A program made the position numbers and the translations under genes. Under the pieces are notes generated by a model. That model made no database searches. It saw nothing but the letters and a program-made list of their open reading frames with translations, and had not been told where the DNA came from. Shown piece after piece: positions 26,048 through 43,012 of a stretch of 64,000 nt of DNA; the first letter of the stretch is position 1, and every line of letters begins with the position of its first letter. Where the stretch lies: positions 186,001 through 250,000 of IMG/VR virus record IMGVR_UViG_3300042564_002819; one strand, given 5' to 3'.

Positions 26048-26162
26048 TTTGCAGTTTCCTTTTTGCTGTTTGTTTGTATTGTATAGCAGCTTGTATTAGC
26101 TAGTGCAAGCATTATTTTACTTGCACTAGCAATTAACAGCGGGGCCTTAGTAGACCCGTTTG

Positions 26163-26462
26163 TTACAAAACACAGTATTCCGTTTGAGGAACAAGTTCGT
26201 TTTCCTCAATGTAACGCAACACGCTAACAAACTGCTCCCGCATGTCAGTGTCAAAATACACAATTGTCGTGTGCAGTTCAACAGCGTCGCTCGTTGCAAT
26301 AAACGAAGCAAGTGCGTCAGCAGCACGGGCAATGTCGTTTGCAAACATTGCAATGTGTTCCTGAGGAATTGCAGTTGCAAAATAGTTTTGCGTGTAAGCT
26401 GCAATAGCGTCACGCATTGCTTTTACAGTGTAAAACTTACGCAGCACAGTCATTTTACGCAT
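26163..26462 (-). CDS. early hypothetical protein
   Basis: GAGGG SD; promoter TTGCAC-N17-TATACA at ~26496-26524. Confidence 0.6.
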   Translation of the reverse strand: MRKMTVLRKFYTVKAMRDAIAAYTQNYFATAIPQEHIAMFANDIARAADALASFIATSDAVELHTTIVYFDTDMREQFVSVLRYIEENELVPQTEYCVL

Positions 26463-26553
26463 TGTGTATTCCCTCTATGCGTTGCTTATGTGTACTGTAT
26501 AGCAGACAGTGTCGGCTAGTGCAAGCACAAAATGCACTTGCACCGGCAGTTTT

Positions 26554-26733
26554 TTAGTCTTGCAATTGCAATTGCAATGTGTTAAGCTTTTGCAGTGCAG
26601 CGTCTTCTTCTGCTAGTGCAAGCTTATAAACTGCATAGCTGCCGCCTTGCATAGCTTCTGCTCGGCACTGTGCAGTAAGTGCTACAGCGTTTGCGTAACG
26701 CTTTTGTGCATTAGCAAGTTTTTTGTTTTGCAT
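26554..26733 (-). CDS. small early protein (59 aa, MQNKKLANAQKRY...)
   Basis: GGAG SD; promoter TTGCAC-N17-TATAAA; below ORF-track cutoff. Confidence 0.55.
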   Translation of the reverse strand: MQNKKLANAQKRYANAVALTAQCRAEAMQGGSYAVYKLALAEEDAALQKLNTLQLQLQD

Positions 26734-26828
26734 AGCGTGTGCTCCGTTTTGCTACGTTATGCGTTGTTTATAGCAGCTTGTGTCTGCTAGTGCAAGCATT
26801 ATTTTACTTGCACTAGCAGTTTTTTGTG

Positions 26829-27020
26829 TTACGCTTCGTCTGCGTCTTCCTCAATTTGCTCCAACATAGCCGTAATGTCGTAGCCAACCGTCTGCATTGC
26901 AATAACAATCTGTTTCGCTGCTTCGTATGCATCCCAGCTTTGCACTTCGTCAGCATCCGTGCTGTCGTATGCATTAGCAGCAATTTGTGCAATGTTAGCA
27001 AACAGTTCTTCGCGTGTCAT
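26829..27020 (-). CDS. small acidic early protein
   Basis: GAGGG SD; TTGACA-N17-TATACA promoter. Confidence 0.6.
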   Translation of the reverse strand: MTREELFANIAQIAANAYDSTDADEVQSWDAYEAAKQIVIAMQTVGYDITAMLEQIEEDADEA

Positions 27021-27110
27021 GTGCAGTCCCTCTTGTGTTGCCCTATGTGTTATGTATAGCACAGCACACAGCACTTGTCAAGTAAAAAGTGCTGTGTGCT
27101 GCAAGTTTTT

Positions 27111-27377
27111 TTAAATATTACACGCTATAAGTGCTTCGTCAAGCATGTCGTGTACTGCACTGTCGTACGCATAGTTATACTCCGTAGCAAAATCCACGTC
27201 GCTGCTGCACATAATTGTGTCATATTTGTTAATGTTATACTGTTTAAATGCAGCAATTATGTCGTTTGCACTATTACAAAAAACGTCAACAGTTTTATTA
27301 ATACGCAGTACAATTGCGTTTGTAGCGTCGTCAAGCATTACAAAAACGTAATTAGTATTTGCTACAGTGTTTTGCAT
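27111..27377 (-). CDS. early protein (no Gly, Pro or Trp)
   Basis: GAGGAG SD; TTGCAA-N16-TATAAC promoter. Confidence 0.6.
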   Translation of the reverse strand: MQNTVANTNYVFVMLDDATNAIVLRINKTVDVFCNSANDIIAAFKQYNINKYDTIMCSSDVDFATEYNYAYDSAVHDMLDEALIACNI

Positions 27378-27504
27378 ATTGTGCTCCTCGCATATGCTGT
27401 GTTGCTTACAAATACAGTTATACACTATGCAGCACAGTTTGCAAGTAACGTTTTGTTACAGTTTTAGTGCGTGTTGTAACAATACGTTATCTCCTACCTC
27501 TGCC

Positions 27505-27852
27505 TCACTCTACACCCCAGCCACAGTATTTCTTCCCACGCACAATATCAAAAAACTCTGCACCTGCAACCGCACCAATCCAGTCGTAAATGTAGTCTCG
27601 TGCTGCCGTGTCCATCTCCCACAGCCGGTCTTCAACCAATCGCCAATCACCTTCGGCTAGCAGCACACAAACATCAAGCCCAGCACTGGCATCTCCCAAC
27701 AGCATAGCTCGCATAGAACGATCCGCTGCCCAACGCTCCTGGTCCGTCCGCATCTTTTCCATTACCAGCAGTTCCACTTGAAGTGCAAGTTCCTGCCAGT
27801 TGATGTGGACAGTGCCGGTAAGAGTGGGTTCATTTACAGTTACGATAGACAT
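27505..27852 (-). CDS. early hypothetical protein
   Basis: GAGG SD; TTGACC-N17-TATACA promoter. Confidence 0.6.
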   Translation of the reverse strand: MSIVTVNEPTLTGTVHINWQELALQVELLVMEKMRTDQERWAADRSMRAMLLGDASAGLDVCVLLAEGDWRLVEDRLWEMDTAARDYIYDWIGAVAGAEFFDIVRGKKYCGWGVE

Positions 27853-27900
27853 CTGTTTGTCCTCTGTGTTGCTGTCTGTTGTATGCTGTATACAGTGTTT

Positions 27901-28074
27901 TCAGCTTGGGGTCAACCCCAAACGATCGTTTAGGATTGAATTGATTTTACGGAGGATCATGTCTTTGATGCATGGCGGCGCAGGATCGTCCTCCAGCAGC
28001 ATAATTGCATCCAGCAGTTGCATATCCGTGCAGGCCTCAAGACGAGCCAGTTCTTCAGCCATTTCTTTTTGCAT
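27901..28074 (-). CDS. small early protein (57 aa)
   Basis: AGGAG SD; TTGCAT-N17-TATAAC promoter. Confidence 0.5.
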   Translation of the reverse strand: MQKEMAEELARLEACTDMQLLDAIMLLEDDPAPPCIKDMILRKINSILNDRLGLTPS

Positions 28075-28132
28075 TGCAGTTTCTCCTGTGCTGTGCCGTT
28101 GTTATACAGACTGTAGGAGCCGAATGCAACCG

Positions 28133-28405
28133 TTATTTTCGCCGGCCTGGGAACTGAATTACTGTGGCAGATTCTGCCACATCTGCTGGCATCAGATCAC
28201 TATACAGCGGGGCCGAATCCAGTGTATAGTCTTCAACAGCCATCAGTTGTGCTGTAACATCAAATACCGTTTCCAGGTTCTCTGGGTAGCTGTCGGTACC
28301 GTATGAGTCGATGGCTGTGTTGACCGCAGCACGTAGAGCTCGCAGCACAATCTCAGGTGCAGTGTAGCTCTCAAGAATTCTTCGCAGTTGTTCAGTAGGG
28401 TCCAC
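28133..28405 (-). CDS. acidic hypothetical protein
   Basis: AAGGA SD, GTG start. Confidence 0.55.
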   Translation of the reverse strand: MDPTEQLRRILESYTAPEIVLRALRAAVNTAIDSYGTDSYPENLETVFDVTAQLMAVEDYTLDSAPLYSDLMPADVAESATVIQFPGRRK

Positions 28406-28462
28406 AATCTGTTTCCTTGGGTTGGAGGTGTTCGCCTACTGTGGGCGAACACCCATTGTTGA

Positions 28463-28807
28463 TTAGTCCAGACGCGAGCCAGCGTAGGCAGTGAAGCCAT
28501 AACGCTTCAGCACTTCTGCGGCAGCACGAGCACCAGCTTCTTTGGTTTCGATGTTTTGTGCACCGTGACGGCTTGGGTTCCAGCATTCGTAAGCCTTGCC
28601 GGTCCAGTCTTTGCGGAAGCCCAGAGCTTCGATATCGCGACGTTCAATCTTACCATCGCGGGTGTTGCCCTTGTGCTTGGGATAGATCGTAACCCAAGCA
28701 AAGCCACACATGCCGCGGTCTACTCCGCCCATTTGTTCAGCAAAGAACTGGTTGGCAGCATCACGGGCAGCAGTTTCAAACTCTTCGCGGATTGCAGTGG
28801 TGTCCAT
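28463..28807 (-). CDS. phage protein (CGFAWV motif)
   Basis: AAGGAG SD; own promoter. Confidence 0.65.
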   Translation of the reverse strand: MDTTAIREEFETAARDAANQFFAEQMGGVDRGMCGFAWVTIYPKHKGNTRDGKIERRDIEALGFRKDWTGKAYECWNPSRHGAQNIETKEAGARAAAEVLKRYGFTAYAGSRLD

Positions 28808-28931
28808 CAGTGGTCTCCTTGTTTGCTCTATGCCTAATGTATAGCAGATCACAGTCTCGGGGTCAACAGGAAAAATAACCCGCACAATCAGATTGTGCAA
28901 ACCGTTTCGCATATCGTATACAGCGGGGCCA

Positions 28932-29237
28932 TCAGTTGTGGTAGGTCTTGGTTACGCGGAGAACTTCGCCATAGCAGTTGATCTCGTAGAGGTATGTCCA
29001 ATGACGACGATATTCAACTTCCTGACGGCATACACGGTAAGGATCTGGCTCTTGGTAATAAACCACAGGCGGCGGATATTCGGTTTGTGGATACACCACC
29101 TGCGGGCGTGGCGCCTTGAGTGCATCTACTACGATTGCACCCACAATGAATCCGCCGAGGATCTTTTCGAAGTCACCTGCGTGAACGGGTGCAGCAAATC
29201 CCAGTGCCACCATTGAGGCAAGAATCATTTTACGCAT
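28932..29237 (-). CDS. secreted or membrane hypothetical protein
   Basis: Signal peptide (VHA), glycine-zipper-like segment. Confidence 0.6.
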   Translation of the reverse strand: MRKMILASMVALGFAAPVHAGDFEKILGGFIVGAIVVDALKAPRPQVVYPQTEYPPPVVYYQEPDPYRVCRQEVEYRRHWTYLYEINCYGEVLRVTKTYHN

Positions 29238-29272
29238 GTTCGGTCTCCTTGTATGCTCTTACAGTATATATC

Positions 29273-29476
29273 TTAAGAGCAGATGTCAACCCTCTTTGAA
29301 CGAGCAAACCTAATTAGATCTCTGTCGACGGAGGTCAATCTTTGGACATCGTATCCAAAAGGTGTATTGACACTTTCCAATCGAGCTGCTAAGTTGGCTG
29401 CGGCATTAGCAATGGTGTCGTTCGAGGAATTCTCAGCTAGGTCTCTGAGATCTTGCATTATACTGTATAAGGTCAT
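29273..29476 (-). CDS. hypothetical protein
   Basis: ORF in early array. Confidence 0.45.
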   Translation of the reverse strand: MTLYSIMQDLRDLAENSSNDTIANAAANLAARLESVNTPFGYDVQRLTSVDRDLIRFARSKRVDICS

Positions 29477-29526
29477 TTTCTTCTTTTTGTTGACGGGCAG
29501 TTTAGTGTCTTGCCCAGGACACCGTC

Positions 29527-29700
29527 TCATTCGAGAGGTTCAGTGCAGTCGCAGTCCACAAACTCGTAGCGGCCTGCGTCAATCTTGGCTAGCCATTTGC
29601 CAAATCCTGTAGGATCTTCCAGTGCAATAATCAGTAGCACTATCGTAAACAACAGGAAAAAGCTCAGCAGCATATCGCGGATGTCGGCAAAAACGTTCAT
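29527..29700 (-). CDS. small membrane protein (57 aa)
   Basis: One hydrophobic helix; overlaps stop of upstream gene. Confidence 0.45.
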   Translation of the reverse strand: MNVFADIRDMLLSFFLLFTIVLLIIALEDPTGFGKWLAKIDAGRYEFVDCDCTEPLE

Positions 29701-29876
29701 TGGCATTCCTCTAGATTATAGTGTTCACAGTCAGCAAGGTACTCAGGATCCAATTGGGAAGCTAGGAAATTTTCGTGTGCAGCCCGGTCGGCCAATGCTT
29801 CGGCCGGTGAAGTTAATACAGGTACGTCGCCACAAGCAGCTAACGTCAGTGCGGAAATCAACATCATCCACTTCAT
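29697..29876 (-). CDS. small lipoprotein
   Basis: MKWMMLISALTLAAC lipobox; own promoter. Confidence 0.55.
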   Translation of the reverse strand: MKWMMLISALTLAACGDVPVLTSPAEALADRAAHENFLASQLDPEYLADCEHYNLEECQ

Positions 29877-29939
29877 CTGCAGGGCCCTTTCTCTTGCTCT
29901 GTATCTTTTTATAGCATCAAGCGACACTGAGGTCAACCA

Positions 29940-30308
29940 TTACCAGACGTGAATAGAAAGACTTTCTGTGTTGTGTTTCCAGTTCATTTCTTTGCCGCCT
30001 GCTGATTCAATGCTTTTGCGGAATGCCGTGCTGTCACGACGGCTCTTAAGCACATACCGTTGAACTTTGACTTCGGTGTGTGCAGGACGACGCTTGGTTG
30101 CAGGACGTGCAGTTTCATAGACTGCACCGTAGCTGGCAAAGTAGTCCTTGACACAGTCAACAACAGCGGCTACGGCTGTTTGGTGTGCAAACGATCCAAA
30201 CACATCCGGATGACGGTCCATGGCTGCTTCTGCACGACGATTGATGTCTTCGATAGCAAACCAACTGGAGCCGACACTGTGTGTCTCTTTGGTTTCTTCC
30301 TTAATCAT
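29940..30308 (-). CDS. hypothetical protein
   Basis: AGGAG SD. Confidence 0.55.
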   Translation of the reverse strand: MIKEETKETHSVGSSWFAIEDINRRAEAAMDRHPDVFGSFAHQTAVAAVVDCVKDYFASYGAVYETARPATKRRPAHTEVKVQRYVLKSRRDSTAFRKSIESAGGKEMNWKHNTESLSIHVW

Positions 30309-30588
30309 AGTAATCTCCTACTAAGATGTATGTTGCAGGTGCACATTCTTCATTATCATTAGCATAGAGCAATCCGTCCTCGCGGTCAAGGAAAAAGTCC
30401 TTGCTTTCAGGATCGATATCATCTACATCAACGAATTCAACCTGGCCGAGATAGGCAAAATCGTCGAGGCACCCGCAGCTTTGAACAAAGCGATACACTC
30501 CAGGCTTATCAACAGTCTTGCCGATAATATCACTGGCTTCTCTCTGCGAGAATTCGTTGAGGTAGTCGATGCTGACTTTAATCATCAC
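30301..30588 (-). CDS. acidic hypothetical protein
   Basis: Coupled ORF. Confidence 0.55.
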   Translation of the reverse strand: MMIKVSIDYLNEFSQREASDIIGKTVDKPGVYRFVQSCGCLDDFAYLGQVEFVDVDDIDPESKDFFLDREDGLLYANDNEECAPATYILVGDYYD

Positions 30589-30728
30589 AGCTCTCCCTTG
30601 CGATGCTTTTGTTTGCGGGTGTATTTGGTTTTGTCACGCACAGTGCGGACGCGGAACTGAGGTGTGGCAAGTTCACGTGCAACAGGGTTGCGACGCTGAA
30701 TGTCTTCTGCACGGATTTGGATTTTCAT
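30585..30728 (-). CDS. ArfA-like small basic protein (47 aa)
   Basis: NPVARELATPQFRVR...KYTRKQKH; GAGGAG SD; own promoter. Confidence 0.55.
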   Translation of the reverse strand: MKIQIRAEDIQRRNPVARELATPQFRVRTVRDKTKYTRKQKHRKGEL

Positions 30729-30773
30729 CGTGTTGCTCCTCGTTTGCCCTATACCGTTTATATAGCATTGAGT

Positions 30774-30980
30774 TCAGTTGGTGTCAACCATTATCTTCTC
30801 AAGTTCGTCGACGTGATACATATAGCGTTGGCGAGTCTTGAACCTTTTATCAAGCCGCACACGAAGCCAACCTTCAACAAAGCCTTCATCTTCAACAGTG
30901 CCCAACAGGCCCTGGGTGGGACGAAGTGCTGGAGCACGGACCTTCACACGGTCTCCAATTTGGATTGTCATCTCTTTCAA
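30774..30980 (-). CDS. small SH3-like protein
   Basis: IGDRVKV...GTV...VRLD. Confidence 0.45.
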   Translation of the reverse strand: MKEMTIQIGDRVKVRAPALRPTQGLLGTVEDEGFVEGWLRVRLDKRFKTRQRYMYHVDELEKIMVDTN

Positions 30981-30983
30981 CCT

Positions 30984-31241
30984 CTATTTGAACTCTACTC
31001 TAACCAAATCGCCTTGTGGATTGAACATGGTGCAGACTCTGTTGCCCACCGCCTTGACAGTGGTACGAGTTTGCCACCACAGTTCGGCTTCTGCCTCAGT
31101 GTCTACCAACACCGCATTCCACTCCAACGGTCCACCAGGATTATCTGCTGGTGGTTTGGAGAACTGTGTTCTTACTTGCCACATCTGAATTCTCCGTGTT
31201 GCCCTATGCTCGGTTATAGCATAGGGCAAGGGTGGTGTCAA
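30984..31241 (-). CDS. hypothetical protein (true start may be downstream)
   Basis: ORF; a promoter lies within its annotated 5' part. Confidence 0.45.
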   Translation of the reverse strand: MTPPLPYAITEHRATRRIQMWQVRTQFSKPPADNPGGPLEWNAVLVDTEAEAELWWQTRTTVKAVGNRVCTMFNPQGDLVRVEFK

Positions 31242-31825
31242 CCTCTGTCTGTGTAGAAGATGTGATTGTCGATACGCACCACACGTTCAAAACTCTTGGC
31301 CCAAGTGGGCTTGACAGATGCAGCGTGGAAGTAGGTCGCTCCCTCAGTGGGATCACGTTCTACTCCGTATGACTGTAGGACTTCTTCTGCAACGACTTGT
31401 GCAGTTGCCCAAGCGGCTTGGTCCTTAGGTCTATCGCTCTTGCCATCGTGTGTCCAGGAGAACTGTTGATCTTCCCACACTACAGCACAGATGGTATCGG
31501 GGAAGTCCGAGTCCATTACTCTGTTGAGTGTAACCCAGCCTACAAACTCCTGTCCTACCTTGCTCTCGCCACGAGATTCAAAATAGACATTCAGTGCTAG
31601 GCAGTGTCGGTCTTCTTTGCTGACCTCAGCAAAGATGGCTTCGGGATCAGGGCGTGGCTGCATAGGTACAGGCACATGAACAATCCGTTCTACCACTCTG
31701 TCGATATACACTACTTCTTTGGGTTCGACGGCCGCTTTTGCCTCATCTGCCGTCAAGTAAACCACTGCCATTGCAACGATCACGGCTGAAGAAGCAACGC
31801 CGCCGATGATGGTACTCATCCTCAT
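31238..31825 (-). CDS. cell wall hydrolase (SleB/Hydrolase_2 family)
   Basis: CLALNVYFESRGE, V.LNRV, FP.TIC.VV, QFSW, GATYFH, I.NHIFY; N-terminal anchor. Confidence 0.9.
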   Translation of the reverse strand: MRMSTIIGGVASSAVIVAMAVVYLTADEAKAAVEPKEVVYIDRVVERIVHVPVPMQPRPDPEAIFAEVSKEDRHCLALNVYFESRGESKVGQEFVGWVTLNRVMDSDFPDTICAVVWEDQQFSWTHDGKSDRPKDQAAWATAQVVAEEVLQSYGVERDPTEGATYFHAASVKPTWAKSFERVVRIDNHIFYTDRG

Positions 31826-31947
31826 TGGATTCTCCTTTTTGTCGTTCGTGTAATAGTTATACTGGTATTGCTCGGAGTAGTCAACGTATATAATAGGAGT
31901 CAGCGAGATCTTGCTGGTTCCTAAGCAGGTTCTTGCTTAGCCTAGAA

Positions 31948-32406
31948 TCAGAAGTTAGGCTCGTAGTCACCGAACTCTTTATGCGTCAGCATCACTTGTT
32001 TATACAGTTGCGCCGCAGTAAGCCCACGATGCAGTCGTGCTAGACGGCTCATCGCAACTTGAATACGCTCGTCTGTGGGCTCTACAAAGCCGTCGTCGTC
32101 CGCTGCTACAGCCGTCTGTGCAGGCTTTACAGCACGTTCTTTGGCTGCTTTAGGCTTAGGTGCAGCGGCAGGCTCTCGGGCTGCTACACGCTGCAACAGT
32201 GCTCGTGCATCAGGTGTGCAAAAGGGCGACTCCAGCAAGTGTGCAGCGGCTGCCTCTCGAGTCATTGCAGTGGGCAGCTGGATCAACTGGATGTCAGTGT
32301 TCTCGCAGCGTTCCAGCATAGCAATACGACCCGCAAGATCGTTTGCAACACGGAACTTAAGCTCACCATTTTCCTTGCTAGTGCCAGCAACAGTGAAAGT
32401 CTTCAT
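31948..32406 (-). CDS. phage protein, paralog of 33678..34145
   Basis: TFTVAG.S..NG..K.R.AN...R..ML......I....LP.AMT..AA..HL. Confidence 0.65.
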   Translation of the reverse strand: MKTFTVAGTSKENGELKFRVANDLAGRIAMLERCENTDIQLIQLPTAMTREAAAAHLLESPFCTPDARALLQRVAAREPAAAPKPKAAKERAVKPAQTAVAADDDGFVEPTDERIQVAMSRLARLHRGLTAAQLYKQVMLTHKEFGDYEPNF

Positions 32407-32417
32407 CTTGCATCTCC

Positions 32418-32540
32418 TTAGTCTGCATACTGAGCGTTGAACAATGCTGCCTTGAAGGTGCCACCGTGAACAATCTTGTTGTCTGCTAGGCGTTTGCCGA
32501 ACCAAACATTACCTGCATTCCAGAACGTCCAACCTTCCAT
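32418..32540 (-). CDS. small hypothetical protein (40 aa)
   Basis: RBS block identical to that of the next gene; own promoter. Confidence 0.45.
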   Translation of the reverse strand: MEGWTFWNAGNVWFGKRLADNKIVHGGTFKAALFNAQYAD

Positions 32541-32745: not shown

Positions 32746-32752
32746 TTCTCGT

Positions 32753-36541: not shown

Positions 36542-36548
36542 GAAACTT

Positions 36549-36630
36549 TGGTACCCGCTGCCGGACTCGAACCGGCACGCACTAGCGGGAGATTTTAAGT
36601 CTCCTGTGTCTACCATTCCACCAAGCGGGC
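36549..36630 (-). tRNA. tRNA-Leu(TAA)
   Basis: GGAGA-CTTAAAA-TCTCC; variable arm; GTTCGA; CCA. Confidence 0.92.
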
Positions 36631-36649
36631 ATCTCTTATTTATACTGGC

Positions 36650-36850
36650 TTAGACAGGCCAGTTGTCAAACTCAACACCACGTCCGACTGTAACGCTCAT
36701 GTCAACCATGCTGATGTCACGCATCAGATTGATCGCAACCTCTTCGTGCCGGCGATGCAACACAGTTGCAAGTCGTTCACGATCACCTTCGCTAAGATTA
36801 GCAATAGATTCAGCTACTTGTTCGACAACGGTTTTCACGTTCTGCTCCAT
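36650..36850 (-). CDS. hypothetical protein
   Basis: ORF directly after TTGACA-N17-TAAGAT promoter. Confidence 0.45.
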   Translation of the reverse strand: MEQNVKTVVEQVAESIANLSEGDRERLATVLHRRHEEVAINLMRDISMVDMSVTVGRGVEFDNWPV

Positions 36851-36887
36851 TTGTTATACAGTATCTTAACACTTTTGTCTGTGAGTG

Positions 36888-37178
36888 TCAACCGGTAATT
36901 GACAGTTCTTTTACCGGTTGCAACAGGCTTGCGTGGACCTTCCACACCGTAGCAGCGTTGCTCTGGCGCACTTGAATGGTCTTGATGTTGACTTTGGTCA
37001 CAGTGCCAACGACCTGCATCCCGCGAGCAGCAAAGCTAACACGGTCGCCTACTTGGAACGTAGCAGTCTTTTGACGTGCAAGGTAAGTGCGACGCAGCTT
37101 GATCGCTTCAACAACACGGTTGAGTTCGTCGTTGTCCATCTTGTGAATCGCAGTGACGGCAGTTGCAAAGTTGTTCAT
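36888..37178 (-). CDS. phage protein with SH3-like C-terminus
   Basis: VGDRVSF...GTVTKVN.KT....W.V..SLL; GAGG SD. Confidence 0.6.
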   Translation of the reverse strand: MNNFATAVTAIHKMDNDELNRVVEAIKLRRTYLARQKTATFQVGDRVSFAARGMQVVGTVTKVNIKTIQVRQSNAATVWKVHASLLQPVKELSITG

Positions 37179-37317
37179 CTTGTGGTCCTCTTGTTGCCCT
37201 ATGTGTTACTTGTAGCACCAATAGACAGGCTCGTCAACAGGAATCTCTTCATCTTCTTCTGCTTGCTTGAGCAGATGCTGTTCAAACTCCAGATATTCTT
37301 CCAGTGTCAAATCCATA

Positions 37318-37506
37318 TTATTTCTTCACCCGCACATAAGCTTTGCCAAAGAACGCAGTGAGCACAACCACAGCCAACCAGTTCCAGAAGGTGTAAGCGA
37401 TAGCAAAGCCGAACAGCGTGTTCACAGCCCAGATCGCAGCCAAGGGCCACAGTATGATCCAGGTAATCAGGAACACGACAATTCCGGCCTTGGTTAGATT
37501 TTTCAT
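37318..37506 (-). CDS. small membrane protein
   Basis: IWAVNTLF..I.YT...WLA; AGGAG SD. Confidence 0.6.
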   Translation of the reverse strand: MKNLTKAGIVVFLITWIILWPLAAIWAVNTLFGFAIAYTFWNWLAVVVLTAFFGKAYVRVKK

Positions 37507-37516
37507 TTCACTTCTC

Positions 37517-37723
37517 CTATTTGACAAAGTATTCACGACGGCTACCTGCGCCATCTGTTTGATTTGTAGGCAGATAACTGAAGCCTGCATAGCGTCCAGC
37601 TTCAAACAATACTGCTTCGATCATGCCGCAAACCGATTCGCGACCATCCGCAGTGCTGCTATCACTGGCAAGATAACTATTTGCACACTTCAGCACAAAT
37701 TCGACATCAACAGTTTTACGCAT
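37517..37723 (-). CDS. hypothetical protein
   Basis: AGGAGG SD; own promoter. Confidence 0.6.
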   Translation of the reverse strand: MRKTVDVEFVLKCANSYLASDSSTADGRESVCGMIEAVLFEAGRYAGFSYLPTNQTDGAGSRREYFVK

Positions 37724-37790
37724 CTTTGCAGCCCTCCTATTGCCCTATGCCGTGTTATAGCATAGGGCATGATTCGGTGTCAACCAGTTA

Positions 37791-38204
37791 TTAGTCTTCT
37801 TCTGTTTCAGTTTCCAGTGCAGTAGAAAGTTCGTAGATGCCGTTGTAGGTGTGAACTTGCCAGACAGCACCAGGAGTGAACAGGTAGTCGTATTCTTGCC
37901 CGTGTTCTGCACGGAACTGACGCCAGTTGTGCTCAGTGCAAGCATCAACATTATGCTCGCCGCGATCACGCCCGTATGCATTGCACTCGCCATCGGGAGC
38001 CGCATCAAAGTCGTGGGCAGTGCCAATCTCAGCACCAAGCGACGAAATGTTGCCAAGAGCAATCAGTTCACGCACCTTGGCTTCGTCAGCGTAGTGGTCT
38101 TGCAGGATTTGACCGTTGTGGCTGAGGTAGCCGTCCCAGTGGCAGTAGATGCCAGAGACAGTGCCGTCAGCGTTCTGGATTGCAATAGTCGAACGAGTTC
38201 CCAT
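37791..38204 (-). CDS. phage protein (MGTRS...YCHWDGY)
   Basis: GAGGG SD; own promoter. Confidence 0.65.
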   Translation of the reverse strand: MGTRSTIAIQNADGTVSGIYCHWDGYLSHNGQILQDHYADEAKVRELIALGNISSLGAEIGTAHDFDAAPDGECNAYGRDRGEHNVDACTEHNWRQFRAEHGQEYDYLFTPGAVWQVHTYNGIYELSTALETETEED

Positions 38205-38257
38205 TGTGTGTATCCCTCTACACAGTGTTGCGTTGTGTGTTAGTTATATGACAAGCC

Positions 38258-38539
38258 TTACGGCTTGTCAACCTTTTCCGGAAACATTGCTGCGACTTTT
38301 TCAACGCCAGCAGCAGTCAGATACAGCACACGATTGCGGGTAGCAGTCTCAACATACACGCAGCCAGCATCGTCGCCGCGGCCCTGGTTCCAAGTCTGCA
38401 GACGCATATCCGGGTTCTTCAGCAGTTGCGTTATAGCCCGTTTGCGAGCCAGCTCACCTTCGTTATAGTTGCCATTGCAGCCACACATGCAGCCAGGACG
38501 ACCCGAGTAAGCACGAACAGTATCCATAACAGTCAGCAT
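38258..38539 (-). CDS. hypothetical protein (YSG..GC.CGC.G.Y motif)
   Basis: GAGGG SD; own promoter. Confidence 0.6.
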   Translation of the reverse strand: MLTVMDTVRAYSGRPGCMCGCNGNYNEGELARKRAITQLLKNPDMRLQTWNQGRGDDAGCVYVETATRNRVLYLTAAGVEKVAAMFPEKVDKP

Positions 38540-38590
38540 CTTGTTTCCCTCTTCGTTGCTGTCTATGTGTTAGTTATAGCAATCATTGAC

Positions 38591-38989
38591 TCAAGCGTCA
38601 ACCACTTTCTCCATCTCAGCGAGCAGATTTTTCAGAGCAGCGATACGCTCTTGCGTAGGGAAGAAGCGACCCGAGTAGCTGTAGCCATCATTGAGTTCTT
38701 TCTCCATAGCACGAGCAATCCGCACCTGCTCCTTGCGACGAGCTTCACTGTCCTGGATGCTACGCAGTTTGGCGGCATGCATCAAGCTAGGACCATAATC
38801 GTCCTTGTATGCTGCGCCACGCTTGTTGAACACGAACTCACGATCATCGCTCTGGACAAAGATGTGCCCATGTCCGTTGATCTTAGTCACAGTGCCAAAG
38901 CGGGCAGTCAACAGCGTTCCGCTGTTGCGATGCTGCCGAGCAATACCAACTGTTTCACCAACTGCGGTAACGAAATCACCGTATGCCAT
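38591..38989 (-). CDS. hypothetical protein
   Basis: GAGGG SD; own promoter. Confidence 0.6.
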   Translation of the reverse strand: MAYGDFVTAVGETVGIARQHRNSGTLLTARFGTVTKINGHGHIFVQSDDREFVFNKRGAAYKDDYGPSLMHAAKLRSIQDSEARRKEQVRIARAMEKELNDGYSYSGRFFPTQERIAALKNLLAEMEKVVDA

Positions 38990-39054
38990 AGCGTGTATCC
39001 CTCTCTGCTATGTTTCTGTCTATGTGTTAGTTATAGCACCAGTACCAAGTGCTG

Positions 39055-39249
39055 TCAAGCAATCTTTTCGCCAGTGCGTAGATTGTATACAAAGCAGATA
39101 CCGCCCAGGGCATCACGAACTTTGATAACGTCGTAGAAGCCCTGCTCCTTCATCAATTGGTGAGCAATTTTGCCTTCAGCGGCGTTGTAAACTGTGGTTA
39201 CAAAAGTCTCAACTTGATTGCGGATGCCATAAACAGAATAGGAACGCAT
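39055..39249 (-). CDS. hypothetical protein
   Basis: GGAG SD; own promoter. Confidence 0.55.
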   Translation of the reverse strand: MRSYSVYGIRNQVETFVTTVYNAAEGKIAHQLMKEQGFYDVIKVRDALGGICFVYNLRTGEKIA

Positions 39250-39314
39250 AGCCTGTCTCCGTTGTGTTGCTCTACTCCAATACACTAGCATCAGAGTAGA
39301 GCCGTGTCAACCAG

Positions 39315-39782
39315 TTAGGCAAAAGTATAATTTTCTTCTGCTACACCGTTCACAGTGCCGTCCAACGAGCGACCAGTGCAGACATAAGGCCGGTTCCATT
39401 TGCCCACATTGATGTGCAGGTAGTAGGCTGTGTCGAAGTAGTCCGTCATGATGTCCGAACGATCATACCACAGGTTGCCACACATAGCAGCAGTCAGTTC
39501 GCGGAAGAACTGACCAACAGTATTGTCTGCATATTGATCCGGACGATAGGCGTTGGCCTGGTAGTAGTCCTTAACTTCGTGGAAACGCTGTCCGGTGCGT
39601 TCTGCATATTCACGATTGAAACGGTTTGCTTCGCCAATCAGATCCAGCTTGCCAGACTTGATTGTAACAACCAGACTGGAATAGTTATCTACTGAAATGG
39701 ACCCTTTCATGCCATACCGCTTGAACACGGCTTTGATAGCCGGTGCCAACTGTGCCTTCTGCTCTTGATTCATGTAAGCCAT
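39315..39782 (-). CDS. phage protein, LPD29-like C-terminal D.MTDYFD motif
   Basis: SDIMTDYFDTAYY; GAGGG SD; own promoter. Confidence 0.55.
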   Translation of the reverse strand: MAYMNQEQKAQLAPAIKAVFKRYGMKGSISVDNYSSLVVTIKSGKLDLIGEANRFNREYAERTGQRFHEVKDYYQANAYRPDQYADNTVGQFFRELTAAMCGNLWYDRSDIMTDYFDTAYYLHINVGKWNRPYVCTGRSLDGTVNGVAEENYTFA

Positions 39783-39846
39783 AACCGTTATCCCTCTTTG
39801 CTCGGTTGCGTCTATGTTCTAATTATAGCACCAGCTGACAGTGCTG

Positions 39847-40026
39847 TCAACAGATTTCAACACCTTCTGAGTTGGCAAAGTCAGTAAACTCGTCTGCTAT
39901 GTTGTTCAGCTGGTTGTGGAACTCGTAGCAGGCAGCAGGATGCCGCTCGCCCAGCAACGATTGCTGAATTGCATCTGCTTCATCCAGCAGGTCGATCAAC
40001 CGCTGCCATTTTTCTTGTTGGGTCAT
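39847..40026 (-). CDS. small acidic protein
   Basis: GGAGG SD; own promoter. Confidence 0.55.
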   Translation of the reverse strand: MTQQEKWQRLIDLLDEADAIQQSLLGERHPAACYEFHNQLNNIADEFTDFANSEGVEIC

Positions 40027-40090
40027 TGTTTCCTCCATTGTGTTGCCCTACTCCACATACATAGCATGTAGAGCAGGGCAGGTCAACCAG

Positions 40091-40330
40091 TTAGTAGATG
40101 AAATCCAACTCGCCGCGGATCACAGAGATCAGGTCGTAACCGTCACGGCTAGGCATATACTCTGCAATCTCTTCCGCACTCCAGTCGCTGTGATCGCACT
40201 CAGCAGCATAGGCAAGGTCTGCCCACTCGTTGGTATCCATTTGACGTGCATCAACTGCATCGCCCAACTCAACCAACGTGACCATATAGTCGTCGTCTTG
40301 GCCACGCCAGATAACAGTATACAGAGCCAT
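40091..40330 (-). CDS. highly acidic small protein
   Basis: ~19 D/E in 79 aa; GAGGAG SD. Confidence 0.6.
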   Translation of the reverse strand: MALYTVIWRGQDDDYMVTLVELGDAVDARQMDTNEWADLAYAAECDHSDWSAEEIAEYMPSRDGYDLISVIRGELDFIY

Positions 40331-40473
40331 TATTCTGTCTCCTCATATGCACCAGCTTCGATGTCAGCTTCGATTTCGTCTGCAATACCACGCAGGATCA
40401 TTACAATTTCCTGAGGATCCAGATTGCCTTCATTCAGCAAGTGCTCCACAGTCGCTTGCAGCATCGTGTCCAT
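40330..40473 (-). CDS. small acidic protein (47 aa)
   Basis: AAGGAG SD; TAATG coupling; below ORF-track cutoff. Confidence 0.5.
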   Translation of the reverse strand: MDTMLQATVEHLLNEGNLDPQEIVMILRGIADEIEADIEAGAYEETE

Positions 40474-40534
40474 TGTTTGCTCCTTGTTGCCCTACTCCAC
40501 ATACATAGCACATGGAGCAGGGCAGGTCAACAGT

Positions 40535-40903
40535 TTATTCAGGAAATTCCAAACGCAGTCGATCCTGCAAACGACGAACTTCTTGACGAGCTTGATCCAC
40601 GGCTTCTGCAAGCATGTCTTCAAGATAACCACCAATGCCCGACTCAATGTCATCAGCAGGATCACAGTTCACAGCATAGCAAGATCCCAACGACTCAGAT
40701 CCTACAAGATGCCCTGCATAGAACACTCGAACTCGTGCGATGTAATGAGTGTCAATGCCACGATTGCAACGATCAATCATGCTGTCGAGATCTGATACAG
40801 TCTCATCAAAGCAATCGCCTAATGCAGCCTGTTCGTAGGTCCAGTCTACAGTTACATCAAACTGATCCTTGCGGAAACGCTTGGCTTCGTAGTAATGGTT
40901 CAC
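40535..40903 (-). CDS. acidic hypothetical protein
   Basis: GGAGGG SD, GTG start; own promoter. Confidence 0.6.
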   Translation of the reverse strand: MNHYYEAKRFRKDQFDVTVDWTYEQAALGDCFDETVSDLDSMIDRCNRGIDTHYIARVRVFYAGHLVGSESLGSCYAVNCDPADDIESGIGGYLEDMLAEAVDQARQEVRRLQDRLRLEFPE

Positions 40904-41019
40904 AGTGTCCCTCCAGTGTTGCCCTATATCCAGACAATATAATACTGCCTACAGTGTGTCAACTGGAAAAAACTTTCAAAATCAGTATTGACCACAAGAA
41001 CAGAATTTGCTATACAACA

Positions 41020-41112
41020 AGTGAGGCCAGGAAAGGTTCACGGACATGAACTGAGTAGGGAACGCGAGGGTCGCCGAAATCTGAACCTACGGTTTAATGA
41101 TTAAACCATACA
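41020..41112 (+). ncRNA. candidate small structured RNA, copy 2
   Basis: TTGACC-N17-TATACA promoter; GTGAGGCC start; CTGAACCTACGGTTTAATGATTAAACCA hairpin. Confidence 0.45.
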
Positions 41113-41298
41113 ACCACCAAGTGTATAGTTGAACAGTAAACCACCCAGACTGAGATGGTTTAACGTTAAACTATCAAAGTGAATCCACCGAGATAACACC
41201 ACCACCACGGCCACCACCACAGTGGCCAAATCATACAAAATGAAATTCCGGTTTTCGAAATGAGATTAACCTTCCGTACGGTGGTTATCGGGACGCCG

Positions 41299-41364
41299 TA
41301 CGGGGCCGTATGACGTGTCGTTTGAGGCCGTTTGACGTGTCGTTTGAGGCCATATGACGTGGTT
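41299..41364. repeat. 22-bp tandem repeat (about 2.7 copies) and right arm of 19-bp inverted repeat
   Basis: GGCCGTATGACGTGTCGTTTGA units at 41304, 41326, 41348. Confidence 0.85.
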
Positions 41365-41690
41365 TTGAAAGGAAAAATTTTAAAGGTCCAAAATCTTATA
41401 TAAGAATTTTTTCGGTTGAGGCAGGTGATGAGAGGCATAGTGTAAATACTCTCGCCTCATCTTTTGTTTTTTCTCACCTTTCGGTTTTCTCACCCCATGT
41501 TCACGGTTCTATTCTCACAAACAGTTCTTCTATTCTATACAAGTGTTTGATATTGTTAAGTTTTCTTTACAGTATAAAAGATTGACATTTATCTTTAAAT
41601 CGTTTATATTAGCGTTATTGATACAGTCTGTTCTAGCAGGATTCGTACCGTAACGCAGTTGCAGTCTGTATTATCTTTTATGATTGTTCT

Positions 41691-41882
41691 ATGATAGTAT
41701 GCCAATGTAATAAGCTCACAACAGATCAGATAGTCACAGCTATTCGATCAATATCATCAGCTGGATCACAGCCTACTCCACAGTCTGTGGTTTCTCATTT
41801 GGGTTGCAGTTTCGATTGTGCCAACGATGTGCCATTGATATTGGGTATAACCAAAACGATACAGCGGGGCCGCACTGTATAG
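41691..41882 (+). CDS. bacterioferritin-associated ferredoxin (Bfd)-like protein
   Basis: MIVC.CN...I..AI...LGC..DC; fourth Cys appears replaced by Asp. Confidence 0.65.
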   Translation: MIVCQCNKLTTDQIVTAIRSISSAGSQPTPQSVVSHLGCSFDCANDVPLILGITKTIQRGRTV

Positions 41883-42031
41883 CGTAGTAGCTATAAAATA
41901 ATTTTAACCTTGAACAGTAACAGCGGGGCCACACTGCGGCTATATACTATTATGTATAGCGTAGATCAAATAGTCGCTGTTGCTATCTTTGTTATGATTC
42001 TTTTAACTGTGTGTATAGGGATCTCTGTATA

Positions 42032-42322
42032 GTGTATCTCTATATCATCTGTGACAGTTCAGAGTCGGTAGTAAAGATCGGATACAGTCGTGATCCGGAT
42101 TCTCGTTTACGATCATTACAAACAGGTCATCCTCTACCATTGCGTGTATATCATAGTGTATTGGTTTCAGAGGATCGTGTGCGTTTATTAGAGCGTCAGT
42201 TACATGCGGAGATGAATCACTATAGAACTCGCGGGGAGTGGTTTCGTATACCAGCAGGTCAGGCTCGTTTGTTATTAGATCACTGTGTAATACGTTGGTC
42301 GGATGATCCTCTGCTGGAGTAA
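42032..42322 (+). CDS. GIY-YIG (T5orf172/MUG113-like) nuclease family protein
   Basis: YLYII...VKIGYS.DP..RL..LQTG.P...E..LH...GEWF. Confidence 0.8.
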   Translation: MYLYIICDSSESVVKIGYSRDPDSRLRSLQTGHPLPLRVYHSVLVSEDRVRLLERQLHAEMNHYRTRGEWFRIPAGQARLLLDHCVIRWSDDPLLE

Positions 42323-42380
42323 CAGCGGGGCCTTTAGATCCGTTTGTTTTAATAAATATCTAAAACAATTGAGACAGTGA

Positions 42381-42689
42381 ATGGCATTTACACAGACCAC
42401 ATTAGACATCACTTCGGTGGAGATATTTACTGCTGACCGTACAGTAGCGATCACAGCATTATATTTGGTCAACACCAGCAGCAGTGCAGTCACGGTCACA
42501 GTGTATCTGGTTCCACCTGCTGGGTCGGCCAGTTCCAATCGAATAGTTTATTCAAACCTAAACTGTAATTCTGATGAAACAGTTGCAGTGCTCACAGAGC
42601 GTATAGTATTAACTGCTGGGGATAGTATCTGGGCTGAGTGTAGCAGTCAGTTTGCTGTGGTAGCCACTGTAGCAAGTGTAGCAGTATAA
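42381..42689 (+). CDS. small beta-rich late protein, probably structural
   Basis: ATAAATA upstream; T/V/S-rich. Confidence 0.5.
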   Translation: MAFTQTTLDITSVEIFTADRTVAITALYLVNTSSSAVTVTVYLVPPAGSASSNRIVYSNLNCNSDETVAVLTERIVLTAGDSIWAECSSQFAVVATVASVAV

Positions 42690-42692
42690 TTT

Positions 42693-42974
42693 TTAAAATA
42701 GCAGGTGTATCACTGTCCAGTCCGATTCAGTGAGTTCATGTTCATCTACGTATACTTCAACAGTAGGGCTATGTCTCGGATGTGGTCTGAATACAGTAAT
42801 TCTTTTTTCAATAAAACCAAACTGAGGTGGTGTTAGAGCAGCTCGTAACCACGCATCGTGCTGGTGAGCATTACGTGTGTTGGGTCGGCGTGTGTATGCT
42901 CTTGGTCCTAGGTGACTGAATACGCCACTGCGGCTGTATACCGCTACACTATTGATTTCTGATATCTTACGCAT
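42693..42974 (-). CDS. hypothetical protein
   Basis: ORF. Confidence 0.45.
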   Translation of the reverse strand: MRKISEINSVAVYSRSGVFSHLGPRAYTRRPNTRNAHQHDAWLRAALTPPQFGFIEKRITVFRPHPRHSPTVEVYVDEHELTESDWTVIHLLF

Positions 42975-43012
42975 TGCCGTTCTCTTAATCTCACAGGGTT
43001 AACAGCGGGGCC

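What the first reader, a model, noticed from the sequence alone, without database searches (positions are those of the whole stretch)
26136..43012. Polarised 11-mer ACAGCGGGGCC, eight copies, all on the plus strand
Exact copies at 26136, 28204, 28920, 35835, 41861, 41920, 42322 and 43002, always preceded by TA or AT. I saw no copy outside 26-43 kb or on the minus strand. Orientation is independent of gene direction, and some copies lie inside CDSs (28133-28405, AAA ATPase, bfd), so it acts at DNA level. One copy intrudes GGGG/CC into the GR-depleted zone, implying selection. The CGGGGCC core recurs in the flanking inverted repeat. Inference: a directional signal (Chi- or KOPS-like, injection, packaging or protein-loading site).
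Basis: partly seen in the sequence, partly recalled or inferred. Interest (0 to 1): 0.75.

Follow-up and report, generated by a model that had tools for sequence, protein, structure and literature searches.

The report
Polar motif near jumbo-phage genome end
The 11-mer is real: it is the reverse reading of a strictly one-stranded, mostly intergenic signal (A-GGCCCCGCTG-Y) that a whole clade of uncultured lake jumbo phages carries as a small array beside a conserved non-coding junction module and as scattered copies between early genes; what reads it is still unknown.

Summary
Observation confirmed: 8 exact plus-strand copies, none on the other strand, no one-mismatch variants, none elsewhere in the 330-kb phage genome. 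The genes here run on the minus strand, so the element reads A-GGCCCCGCTG-Y(T/A)A on the sense strand of a block of small early genes, each with a sigma70-like promoter. It is conserved: 54 distinct AT-rich viral loci hold 151 exact copies on one strand and 0 on the other. Copies avoid ORFs strongly. They usually sit after a stop codon, before an SD-ATG, or in a 5' leader. No hairpin and no -35/-10 lies at a fixed distance. The core feature is an unphased array of 2-5 copies (31-73 bp apart), 40-600 nt upstream of a conserved box. That box is loosely collinear with the mapped genome end of phage PA5oct, which carries its own repeat array there. Not supported: Chi/KOPS-like host word (301 Burkholderiales genomes), sigma70 promoter, ops/boxA membership, nicking by the neighbouring T5orf172 nuclease. 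Best reading (about 0.35): a hairpin-independent polar signal read along early transcription (pause, termination or processing), with a fail-safe array before the junction. Main rival: a packaging or terminus recognition repeat.

The parts
43002..43012 (-). Motif copy (sense reading GGCCCCGCTGT-TA). It abuts the TAA stop of ORF 43013-43330 (-) and lies 27 nt before the ATG of ORF 42693-42974 (-).
42322..42332 (-). Motif copy ('copy 1' of the conserved module). It overlaps the stop codon of the antisense T5orf172 gene.
41920..41930 (-). Motif copy, first member of the tandem pair (59 bp start to start).
41861..41871 (-). Motif copy, second member of the pair. Here it can pair with CAGTGC just upstream to give a terminator-like hairpin (41880-41859, minus strand). 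This pairing is not seen in relatives.
35835..35845 (-). Motif copy inside the AAA-ATPase gene, read GGC CCC GCT GTT (GPAV), in the hypervariable linker. The same site carries the motif in L026 only.
28920..28930 (-). Motif copy 1 nt after the TGA of ORF 28932-29237 (-). A hairpin with a T run (28903-28877) follows, then an early promoter and the next gene.
28204..28214 (-). Motif copy 28 nt after the stop of ORF 28243-28500 (-), followed by a hairpin and an early promoter. It is inside only the doubtful orphan ORF 28133-28405, in a different frame (APLY).
26136..26146 (-). Motif copy 16 nt after the stop of ORF 26163-26462 (-). A perfect hairpin follows at once, and its 3' arm carries the -35 of the next early promoter.
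41424..41449 (-). Conserved box (consensus aAgtATTTgAACTATGCCTcTC..caCC), found downstream of the array in 36 distinct loci. It is loosely collinear with the PA5oct genome end; the equivalent of PA5oct base 1 (CACC) would be 41427-41424.
41469..41494 (-). Short direct repeats (GGTGAGAAAA, two copies) just upstream of the box. Relatives carry other, lineage-specific repeats at this position.
41297..41362 (.). Three 22-bp repeats around an 18-bp palindrome (TCATACGG-CC-CCGTATGA type), operator-like, about 60-130 nt beyond the box.
23857..23900 (.). Two copies of the same 22-bp repeat, inverted, at the far end of the early block. The position parallels the repeats at the distal end of PA5oct's 39-kb terminal repeat.
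42011..42322 (+). Antisense T5orf172/MUG113 (GIY-YIG clan) nuclease gene lying between 'copy 1' and the pair. It is the only one in the genome.
23191..41166 (-). Block of small early genes, nearly each with a TTGAC(A)/TTGCAC-N17-TGCTATA(A/C) promoter, a conserved CATAGGGCAA leader and an SD. GC is 45-52%. It includes the AAA ATPase (35057-36055) and three tRNA genes (36344-36630).

Best explanation
ACAGCGGGGCC is the antisense reading of a self-contained, asymmetric element of about 14-16 nt, A-GGCCCCGCTG-Y-(T/A)-A. It lies on the sense (non-template) strand of the early region of a clade of freshwater jumbo phages distantly related to PA5oct. I read it as a hairpin-independent polar signal met by the transcription machinery moving along the early strand. 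It could be read on the non-template DNA or on the nascent RNA, by host RNA polymerase with a conserved host factor, or by a conserved phage protein. Its effect would be to pause, terminate, release or cut transcripts at cistron boundaries. Single copies sit at gene ends and in leaders and would tune read-through into the next gene or hairpin-promoter cassette. The unphased array of 2-5 copies would act as a fail-safe insulator where upstream genes run into the conserved non-coding junction module, which is probably the boundary of a long terminal repeat. Shown here: existence, polarity, conservation, intergenic placement, the array-box synteny, and the absence of structure or promoter elements.
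For: (1) 151 exact copies on one strand against 0 on the other in 54 distinct AT-rich viral loci. Whole-record scans of 11 phage records give 55 against 0, always the strand of the AAA-ATPase and early genes. (2) In 75 of 80 copies the flanking DNA upstream is sense-coded by AT skew. (3) Copies avoid ORFs: 18/74 lie in any sense ORF of 40 aa or more, against 73% of bases; 5/74 lie in conserved ORFs, against 50% (p about 1e-15). 15% lie within 5 nt after the stop of an ORF of at least 50 codons, against 2% of random positions. (4) Typical layouts are stop-motif-(7-50 nt)-SD-ATG, promoter-motif-SD-ATG and stop-motif-hairpin-early promoter. All of these are transcribed positions where nut, ops or processing sites would sit. 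(5) Two copies lie 13 nt upstream of an ATG, with the SD in between, so they are inside the mRNA rather than promoters for it. (6) The array spacing (31-73 bp) is unphased and the spacers are not conserved, so the copies look like independent repeated units. (7) The 10-nt core is invariant across phages whose ATPase is only 56-71% identical, while the early-leader boxes and the iterons differ between lineages. This points to a very conserved reader. (8) A copy near the ATPase gene recurs at different exact places in different lineages, including the same variable linker in two non-sister lineages. That suggests selection for a copy along the transcription unit rather than for a fixed site.
Against: There are no transcript data: no RNA run was listed. 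About three quarters of the copies in box-bearing loci sit in the 700 nt before the box. That set was partly selected for pairs, but the pattern still points to a locus-specific role such as packaging or an origin. PA5oct has an analogous array of a different word exactly before its mapped genome end and nowhere else. In the window three copies lie among + strand genes (41.7-42.7 kb), where minus-strand transcription is unproven. In L255 the first copy follows an intrinsic-terminator-like hairpin. The match to the consensus pause and to ops is only partial. No phage NusG/RfaH was found, and the RegB scan was uninformative because its control did not ring. Intergenic bias could partly reflect the difficulty of encoding a fixed GC-rich 14-mer in an AT-rich genome.
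Confidence: 0.35

Rival explanations
1. Packaging or terminus recognition repeats. The array is the binding site of the small terminase subunit, or another end-processing protein, next to the cleavage site at the boundary of a long direct terminal repeat. Scattered copies are secondary sites or polar 'end is near' signals for the packaging motor, in the manner of lambda cosB/cosQ.
For: The array-then-box order holds in 36 distinct loci, with the array 40-560 nt upstream. 79 of 106 copies in those loci lie within 700 nt upstream of the box. PA5oct has PhageTerm-mapped ends and a 39-kb repeat full of early genes (PMC7318152). It carries 5-6 direct repeats (AATGAGTGA, spacing 36-90 bp) in the last 320 nt before its end and nowhere else in 287 kb. 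Its junction shows the same order of short blocks as the module here: TATTT..GAAC, CACC, AAAATTTT, GCT(C)TATAG. Both phages have short repeats just inside the start and at the far end of the (inferred) repeat. Contig depth is higher on the early-gene side: 15.6 against about 7 in X4 and 23.8 against 16.7 in X2, where the model predicts 1.65x and 1.47x. The L045 lineage changed all five copies together, which fits co-evolution with a phage protein.
Against: The alignment of the module to the PA5oct junction is not statistically secure (z from -1.7 to 3.3). The depth data come from contig means in mixed strains. Packaging does not explain 17-19 copies spread over 52 kb in G005, nor their placement between stop codons and SD sequences. 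PA5oct has no scattered copies. The lineage-specific iterons next to the box may be the better analogue of the PA5oct array.
Confidence: 0.22
2. RNA-level processing, decay or translation site. A sequence-specific endoribonuclease or RNA-binding protein recognises A-GGCCCCGCUG in early mRNAs, in the manner of T4 RegB at GGAG, and cuts or masks intercistronic regions.
For: The evidence on sense-strand polarity and intergenic placement is the same as for the best explanation. Many copies lie 7-30 nt upstream of an SD or right after a stop. Only a subset of early genes carries a copy, as with RegB sites.
Against: No RegB homologue was found, but the control did not ring, so this says little. An array of 2-5 sites in an ORF-poor leader and a site inside the ATPase mRNA are odd for a shut-off nuclease. 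There are no RNA data.
Confidence: 0.18
3. Chi-like or other DNA-tracking signal (RecBCD/AddAB, translocase, fork barrier, nick site), read on duplex or single-stranded DNA independently of transcription.
For: Strict polarity. The antisense word CAGCGGGG is G-rich and contains AGCGG (the Bacillus Chi, from memory). If the early block is the left terminal repeat, the four copies inside it are correctly oriented for an enzyme entering at that end (inference).
Against: In 301 Burkholderiales genomes the word is about as frequent as its reversed control. The outlier G255 has it on both strands throughout, which is a codon effect (GCC CCG CTG). A 15-mer scan of 185,579 species genomes gave only scattered single hits. 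The array would be internal and wrongly oriented in the virion. The strong ORF avoidance is unlike Chi or KOPS. The only nearby nuclease (T5orf172) is absent from five motif-bearing genomes. The host is unknown, so the test is incomplete.
Confidence: 0.1
4. Target or boundary of mobile DNA. The conserved word is the homing site of the T5orf172 endonuclease or a cassette junction, and has no function for the phage.
For: The T5orf172 gene, or a decayed remnant of one, lies antisense between 'copy 1' and the pair in the window, L012, L047, L230, L253, L285 and L235.
Against: Most motif-bearing genomes have no such gene. A homing site need not be repeated 8-19 times or be polar. Homing genes usually settle next to sequences that are conserved for other reasons.
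Confidence: 0.07
5. Promoter for a modified or phage-encoded RNA polymerase (middle-type promoter).
For: Polarity, intergenic position, tandem copies, and a 3' half (TG-Y-TA) that recalls the phage's own TGCTATAAC -10 element.
Against: The hexamer after TG(n) is not -10-like: T at its last position in 18% of class A copies. No -35 or -10 lies at any fixed distance. No T7-type polymerase or sigma70 region 2 is encoded. Some copies lie too close to the SD-ATG to start the mRNA.
Confidence: 0.05

Closest known systems
ops (operon polarity suppressor, GGCGGTAGCGTG), the RfaH loading site on the non-template strand
   Same: About 12 nt, linear, GC-rich and orientation-specific. It sits on the sense strand in leaders of long operons, sometimes repeated, and needs no RNA hairpin. 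Both begin with GG and contain a later TG (PMC5995543).
   Different: The spacing is wrong: GG-N6-TG here against GG-N8-TG in ops. The base after the candidate pause position is T/A, not G. No RfaH/NusG paralogue is encoded by the phage. Here copies also follow stop codons all along the region.
Lambda nut sites (boxA, CGCTCTTA) and rrn boxA
   Same: A linear RNA element in phage early operons, placed after a promoter or right after a gene and before a terminator. CGCTGTTA in five window copies differs from lambda boxA in one base (the boxA sequence is from memory).
   Different: The invariant part here is GGCCCCGCTG, not the U-rich part that matters in boxA. The 3' part varies (CTA, TAC, TGC, CGG). 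There is no boxB hairpin.
Repeat array before the physical end of phage PA5oct; lambda cosB/cosQ-type packaging signals
   Same: Direct repeats of 9-14 nt, spaced 31-90 bp, one orientation, a few hundred nt before a conserved junction sequence followed by a block of early genes.
   Different: A different word. PA5oct has no scattered copies. Homology of the junction is only suggestive. The ends of this phage are not mapped.
Chi (GCTGGTGG and its relatives) and KOPS
   Same: A short polar word, clustered, possibly near a DNA end.
   Different: It is 14-16 nt long rather than 5-8, is almost entirely intergenic, and is not enriched or skewed in the bacterial genomes sampled.
T7 class II (concatemer-junction) pause/termination signal ATCTGTT
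   Same: A hairpin-independent, polar, sequence-specific signal next to a concatemer junction. It shares CTGTT with the window's variant (from memory).
   Different: It is read by T7 RNA polymerase, which this phage lacks. It is a single site, not an array plus scattered copies.
T4 PeSL cassettes (stem-loop plus early promoter) and RegB sites (GGAG)
   Same: The early region is built of small genes separated by hairpin-plus-promoter cassettes. The motif sits just upstream of such cassettes in three window cases.
   Different: The motif is an extra element present at only 8 of about 45 junctions. It is not part of the hairpin or of the promoter.

Membership tests
Chi / KOPS-type host architecture words | Over-representation in the host chromosome | tested here: not met
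   In 301 Burkholderiales genomes the counts are about equal to the reversed control. Five genomes of other groups give the same result. The host itself is unknown.
Chi / KOPS-type host architecture words | Strand skew that follows the replichores | tested here: not met
   The outlier G255 has 47 + and 63 - copies interleaved along the chromosome.
Chi / KOPS-type host architecture words | Recognition by RecBCD/AddAB or FtsK | not testable with these tools
   Needs biochemistry and the host.
ops / RfaH recruitment site | Match to the consensus pause (G at -10, Y at -1, G at +1; TG at ops positions 11-12) | tested here: not met
   Either register satisfies only two of the three positions: GG-N6-TG-Y-(T/A).
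ops / RfaH recruitment site | A NusG paralogue to read it | tested here: inconclusive
   None is encoded in the phage. A host paralogue cannot be excluded.
boxA / nut antitermination site | Conserved GCUCUUUA-type core, with a boxB hairpin in lambdoid phages | tested here: not met
   The conserved part is GGCCCCGCTG, the 3' part varies, and no downstream structure is enriched.
sigma70 promoter (including extended -10) | A -10 hexamer TAnnnT and/or a -35 at fixed spacing | tested here: not met
   No conserved column lies outside -3..+14. T at the hexamer's last position in 18% (class A) and 38% (class B) of copies.
Intrinsic terminator | GC-rich hairpin followed by a T run | tested here: not met
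   Mean folding energy downstream is -12.3 kcal/mol against -12.8 for after-stop controls (p = 0.33). Only a few copies form part of a hairpin.
Terminase recognition repeats (pac/cosB-like) | Repeats adjacent to the DNA cleavage site | tested here: inconclusive
   The array lies 40-560 nt from a conserved box. The box is collinear with the PA5oct end, but the alignment z is at most 3.3. The ends of this phage are not mapped, and the depth hints are weak.
Terminase recognition repeats (pac/cosB-like) | Binding by the small terminase subunit | not testable with these tools
   Needs protein-DNA assays.
Site-specific nick sites (T5, tf, phiKMV type) | Strand breaks at the motif in virion DNA | not testable with these tools
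   Only assembled contigs of the runs were available.
Site-specific nick sites (T5, tf, phiKMV type) | A nickase present wherever the motif is | tested here: not met
   T5orf172 is absent from G001-G005, all of which carry the motif.
CRISPR repeat / solitary repeat unit | A repeat of at least 23 nt with conserved flanks or a hairpin | tested here: not met
   Conservation ends after about 16 nt. The shared CCCCGCTG in a 61-bp-period array of genome G074 is coincidental.
Protein-coding repeat | Constant reading frame | tested here: not met
   The two possible CDS copies use different frames (GPAV and APLY). Collagen-like GPAG repeats found in GC-rich phages are an unrelated class.

The most novel reading that the evidence does not exclude
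A previously undescribed polar 'punctuation' signal of a widespread clade of uncultured freshwater jumbo phages. It would be a hairpin-free 14-16-nt word read on the sense strand by host RNA polymerase or a conserved unknown factor. It would insulate the concatemer junction or terminal repeat from incoming transcription and set read-through between early genes. Alternatively, it would be a new kind of packaging signal that is also sown through the terminal repeat.
Probability: 0.3. Interest if true: 0.75.

Novelty: new variant of a known kind. Interest (0 to 1): 0.6.

Why it matters
Regulatory and packaging signals of jumbo phages are almost unknown, and this clade has no cultured member. A 10-nt core that stays invariant and strictly one-stranded across dozens of diverged genomes is a handle on a conserved machine, whether that is the transcription-elongation apparatus, the terminase or an unknown protein. 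Together with the conserved box, it offers a sequence-only way to locate the probable genome end and early region in metagenomic jumbo-phage contigs. It is short enough to test directly in vitro. No paper in the searched library mentions the word in this context.

Tried and rejected
- **sigma70 or extended -10 promoter:** rejected.
- **Phage-encoded polymerase or sigma factor:** no T7-type RNA polymerase, sigma70 region 2 or NusG domain in the genome. The RegB scan was uninformative because its control did not ring.
- **Terminator or conserved RNA structure:** no enrichment of downstream folding. Rfam finds only the three tRNAs. The roughly 175-nt segment between copy 1 and the pair has no convincing conserved fold.
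- **Protein-coding repeat:** rejected because the frames differ. The collagen-like hits in GC-rich phages are unrelated.
- **Chi/KOPS-like word:**
  - The species-genome scan gave scattered single hits. The three Microcystis hits are one orthologous gene.
  - 301 Burkholderiales genomes show no enrichment. That set includes one unpublished genome, G309, on which no claim rests.
  - An apparent all-plus skew in G255 was an artefact of the tool listing + matches first. The full list is mixed.
- **T5orf172 as the nickase or reader:** rejected, since it is absent from G001-G005.
- **PA5oct:** it has no copy of the motif and no analogous GC-rich polar word in its repeat.
- **GC skew:** the cumulative skew follows gene direction only and shows no origin signal.
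- **Sequencing runs:** no RNA run was listed. DNA runs are kept as contigs only, so read ends, nicks and local depth could not be examined.
- **Literature:** a search for the word found only unrelated primers.
- **Complementarity:** I checked by eye whether the motif pairs with the early-leader boxes, tRNAs or 16S rRNA. I found at most 4-6 bp and did not pursue it.

Full report
**Observation.** The pattern ACAGCGGGGCC occurs eight times in the window, at the stated coordinates, always on the + strand. None is expected in dinucleotide shuffles. Allowing two mismatches adds only four hits, which is chance level (5.4 expected), so there are no degenerate copies. The window is bases 186001-250000 of a 330,024-bp IMG/VR virus record that CheckV estimates to be 93% complete. 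The whole record holds just these eight copies and none on the other strand. Each copy is preceded by TA or AT.

**Setting.** The genome is about 36% G+C, but window 22-44 kb is 44-52% and has reversed AT skew. The genes there are on the minus strand:
- Minus-strand ORFs have the many and strong matches in relatives; plus-strand ORFs are shadows.
- Nearly every small gene is preceded, on the minus strand, by TTGAC(A)/TTGCAC-N17-TGCTATA(A/C), a conserved CATAGGGCAA leader, an SD and an ATG.

This is a T4/SPO1/PA5oct-style early region. The element should therefore be read as GGCCCCGCTGT on the sense strand. The AAA ATPase (35057-36055) is 47% identical to a PA5oct protein. PA5oct depends on the host polymerase and has a 39-kb terminal repeat full of early genes (PMC7318152). 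The runs that hold the sequence are lake-water metagenomes.

**Conservation.**
- Eighty IMG/VR loci encode relatives of the ATPase. Every relative with at least 56% identity and enough upstream flank carries the word, always on the ATPase strand.
- Whole-record scans give one-strand counts of 8, 3, 4, 2, 1, 17, 3, 3, 4 and 5 for ten records, plus five variant copies in G006. All copies cluster in the early region.
- A scan for two copies 20-50 nt apart hit more than 117 viral contigs. About 45 are genuine: 38-49% G+C, with A before the word. The rest are collagen-like coding repeats in GC-rich phages.
- In total, 54 distinct AT-rich loci hold 151 exact 10-mers on one strand and 0 on the other.
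- PA5oct itself has none.
- The logo of 68 unique copies is a(-3) w(-2) A(-1, 87%) GGCCCCGCTG Y T/A A, with nothing conserved further out on either side.
- One lineage (L045/G006) has GGTCACCGCTG in all five of its copies, at the place where its sister L051 has the canonical pair.

**Placement.**
- Copies avoid ORFs. 18 of 74 lie in any sense ORF of 40 aa or more, against 73% of bases. 5 of 74 lie in ORFs conserved in at least two loci, against 50%.
- 15% lie within 5 nt after the stop of an ORF of at least 50 codons, against 2% of random positions.
- In 75 of 80 copies the upstream DNA is sense-coded by AT skew.
- The usual layouts are stop-motif-(7-50 nt)-SD-ATG, promoter-motif-SD-ATG and stop-motif-hairpin-early promoter.
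- In the window, 43002, 28920, 28204 and 26136 lie 0, 1, 28 and 16 nt after a stop. The last three are followed by a hairpin and the next early promoter.
- The ATPase copy sits in a hypervariable linker. The same site carries the word in L026, which is not the closest relative. Other lineages have a copy just before or after the gene instead.
- The two candidate CDS copies use different frames, so the constraint is not on protein.
- Downstream folding is no stronger than after ordinary stop codons.
- The hexamer after TG(n) is not -10-like.

**The module.** The most constant feature is an array. Forty-two of 54 loci have 2-5 copies 31-73 bp apart, with no helical phasing and no conserved spacers. 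In 36 distinct loci the array lies 40-560 nt upstream of a conserved box, aAgtATTTgAACTATGCCTcTC..caCC (window 41449-41424, minus strand). The box is preceded by 2-4 lineage-specific short direct repeats and followed by an A/T run. Often a further copy lies 135-360 nt upstream of the pair. Between them is one of three things:
- about 175 nt of conserved non-coding DNA without a convincing fold;
- an antisense T5orf172 (GIY-YIG clan) gene, as in the window (42011-42322), L012 and L047;
- decayed remnants of such a gene.

It probably homed next to a conserved site.

**A possible genome end.** PA5oct's record starts at its PhageTerm-mapped left end. Its last 320 nt hold 5-6 direct repeats (AATGAGTGA, spacing 36-90 bp) that occur nowhere else in the genome. 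Its junction shows the same order of short blocks as the module here: TATTT..GAAC, then CACC at base 1, AAAATTTT, GCT(C)TATAG, and T-rich repeats. Both phages have short repeats just inside the start and at the far end of the known or inferred repeat: window 41297-41362 and 23857-23900, and PA5oct about +40 and 39,080. The pairwise alignments are not significant on their own (z from -1.7 to 3.3), so this is a lead and not a result. If it holds, the terminal repeat would span about 41427 to about 23860. Four window copies would lie inside it and four within 1.6 kb outside its start. Contig depths are higher on the early side: 15.6 against about 7 in X4 and 23.8 against 16.7 in X2, where the model predicts 1.65x and 1.47x. 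These are contig means in mixed strains.

**What it is not.**
- It is not a sigma70 promoter, an intrinsic terminator, a CRISPR repeat or a coding repeat.
- It fails the consensus-pause/ops register: GG-N6-TG here against GG-N8-TG (ops sequence from PMC5995543).
- It fails the boxA core.
- No phage NusG, T7-type polymerase or sigma70 region 2 is encoded.
- As a Chi/KOPS-like host word it finds no support. Counts equal the reversed control in 301 Burkholderiales genomes and in five genomes of other groups. The outlier G255 is a two-strand codon effect. The species-wide 15-mer scan gave single chance hits. The host is unknown, so this test is incomplete.

**Interpretation.** Existence, polarity, conservation, intergenic placement and the array-box synteny are shown.

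I favour a transcription-coupled polar signal (about 0.35). It is the only reading that covers both the scattered copies at cistron boundaries and an array placed where upstream genes run into the junction module. It also fits the invariance of the core across lineages whose other regulatory words differ.

The main rival is a packaging or terminus recognition repeat (about 0.22). The PA5oct parallel and the concentration of copies before the box favour it. It leaves the scattered, SD-adjacent copies unexplained.

The remaining readings are an RNA processing site (0.18), a Chi-like or other DNA-tracking signal (0.10), a homing target (0.07) and a promoter (0.05).

Raw-read end and depth analysis and a simple in vitro transcription test would separate these readings.

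Noticed in passing
window 23191-41166 (minus strand), e.g. 39058-39030, 38601-38573, 31241-31213: The early region is built of small genes, each with its own strong sigma70-like promoter (TTGACA-N17-TGCTATAAC), a conserved leader box CATAGGGCAA and an SD. Relatives share the promoter (AGGGGTTGACA) but have lineage-specific leader boxes, for example ACAGTGAGCGA in L045/L051.
   Followed up: partly
window 26099-26131 and 26785-26817; also 25249-25270: Perfect hairpins whose 3' arm carries the -35 of the next early promoter. These are PeSL-like stem-loop-plus-promoter cassettes, repeated several times.
   Followed up: no
window 41297-41362 and 23857-23900: 22-bp repeats around an 18-bp palindrome (TCATACGG-CC-CCGTATGA) at both ends of a 17.4-kb block. 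They look like operators. Relatives L017 and L012 have the same kind of site about 100 nt beyond the box.
   Followed up: partly
window 42011-42322 (+), 42381-42689 (+), 41691-41882 (+): A small + strand island inside the minus-strand region: a 103-aa T5orf172/MUG113 nuclease domain, an unassigned 102-aa ORF that might be its DNA-binding part, and a 63-aa ORF with a sub-threshold BFD-like [2Fe-2S] hit. A strong + strand promoter-like site lies at 41582-41610.
   Followed up: partly
window 40501-46500 in runs X2 and X4: Contig depth is about 1.4-2.1 times higher left of 43.3-44.3 kb than right of it. This is compatible with a collapsed terminal repeat or with strain mixtures.
   Followed up: partly
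L302:8638-8907, L303:12303-12506, L045:1199-1368, G008:7889-8044: In some relatives the array has grown into regular tandem repeats (units of 43-48 or 73 nt, 3-6 copies), some with GACCCCGCTG variants. This shows that arrays expand by unequal crossing-over.
   Followed up: no
L058:20380-20562 (G005 about 371.8-372.0 kb): One motif copy is embedded in a run of AGCAAGCGCATAGC-type tandem repeats at the point where the circular assembly was opened (128-bp end overlap).
   Followed up: no
G005 320293-364800 (L094, L058): Several motif copies precede paralogous small genes whose products begin MR(A/G/D)xEF. Some copies may have spread with gene duplications.
   Followed up: no
window 21765-23189 (+) and 31238-31825 (-): A DnaB-like replicative helicase lies next to the far end of the early block. 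A SleB-type cell-wall hydrolase (Hydrolase_2) lies among the early genes.
   Followed up: no
window 32688-32707 and 41091-41110: A perfect 20-nt inverted repeat (TATGGTTTAATCATTAAACC), itself palindromic, with its two copies 8.4 kb apart. Unexplained.
   Followed up: no
G074:C1:119997-124154 (a Burkholderiales genome): About 69 copies of CCCCGCTG at a 61-bp period: a type I-E-like CRISPR array whose repeat happens to share 8 nt with the motif.
   Followed up: no
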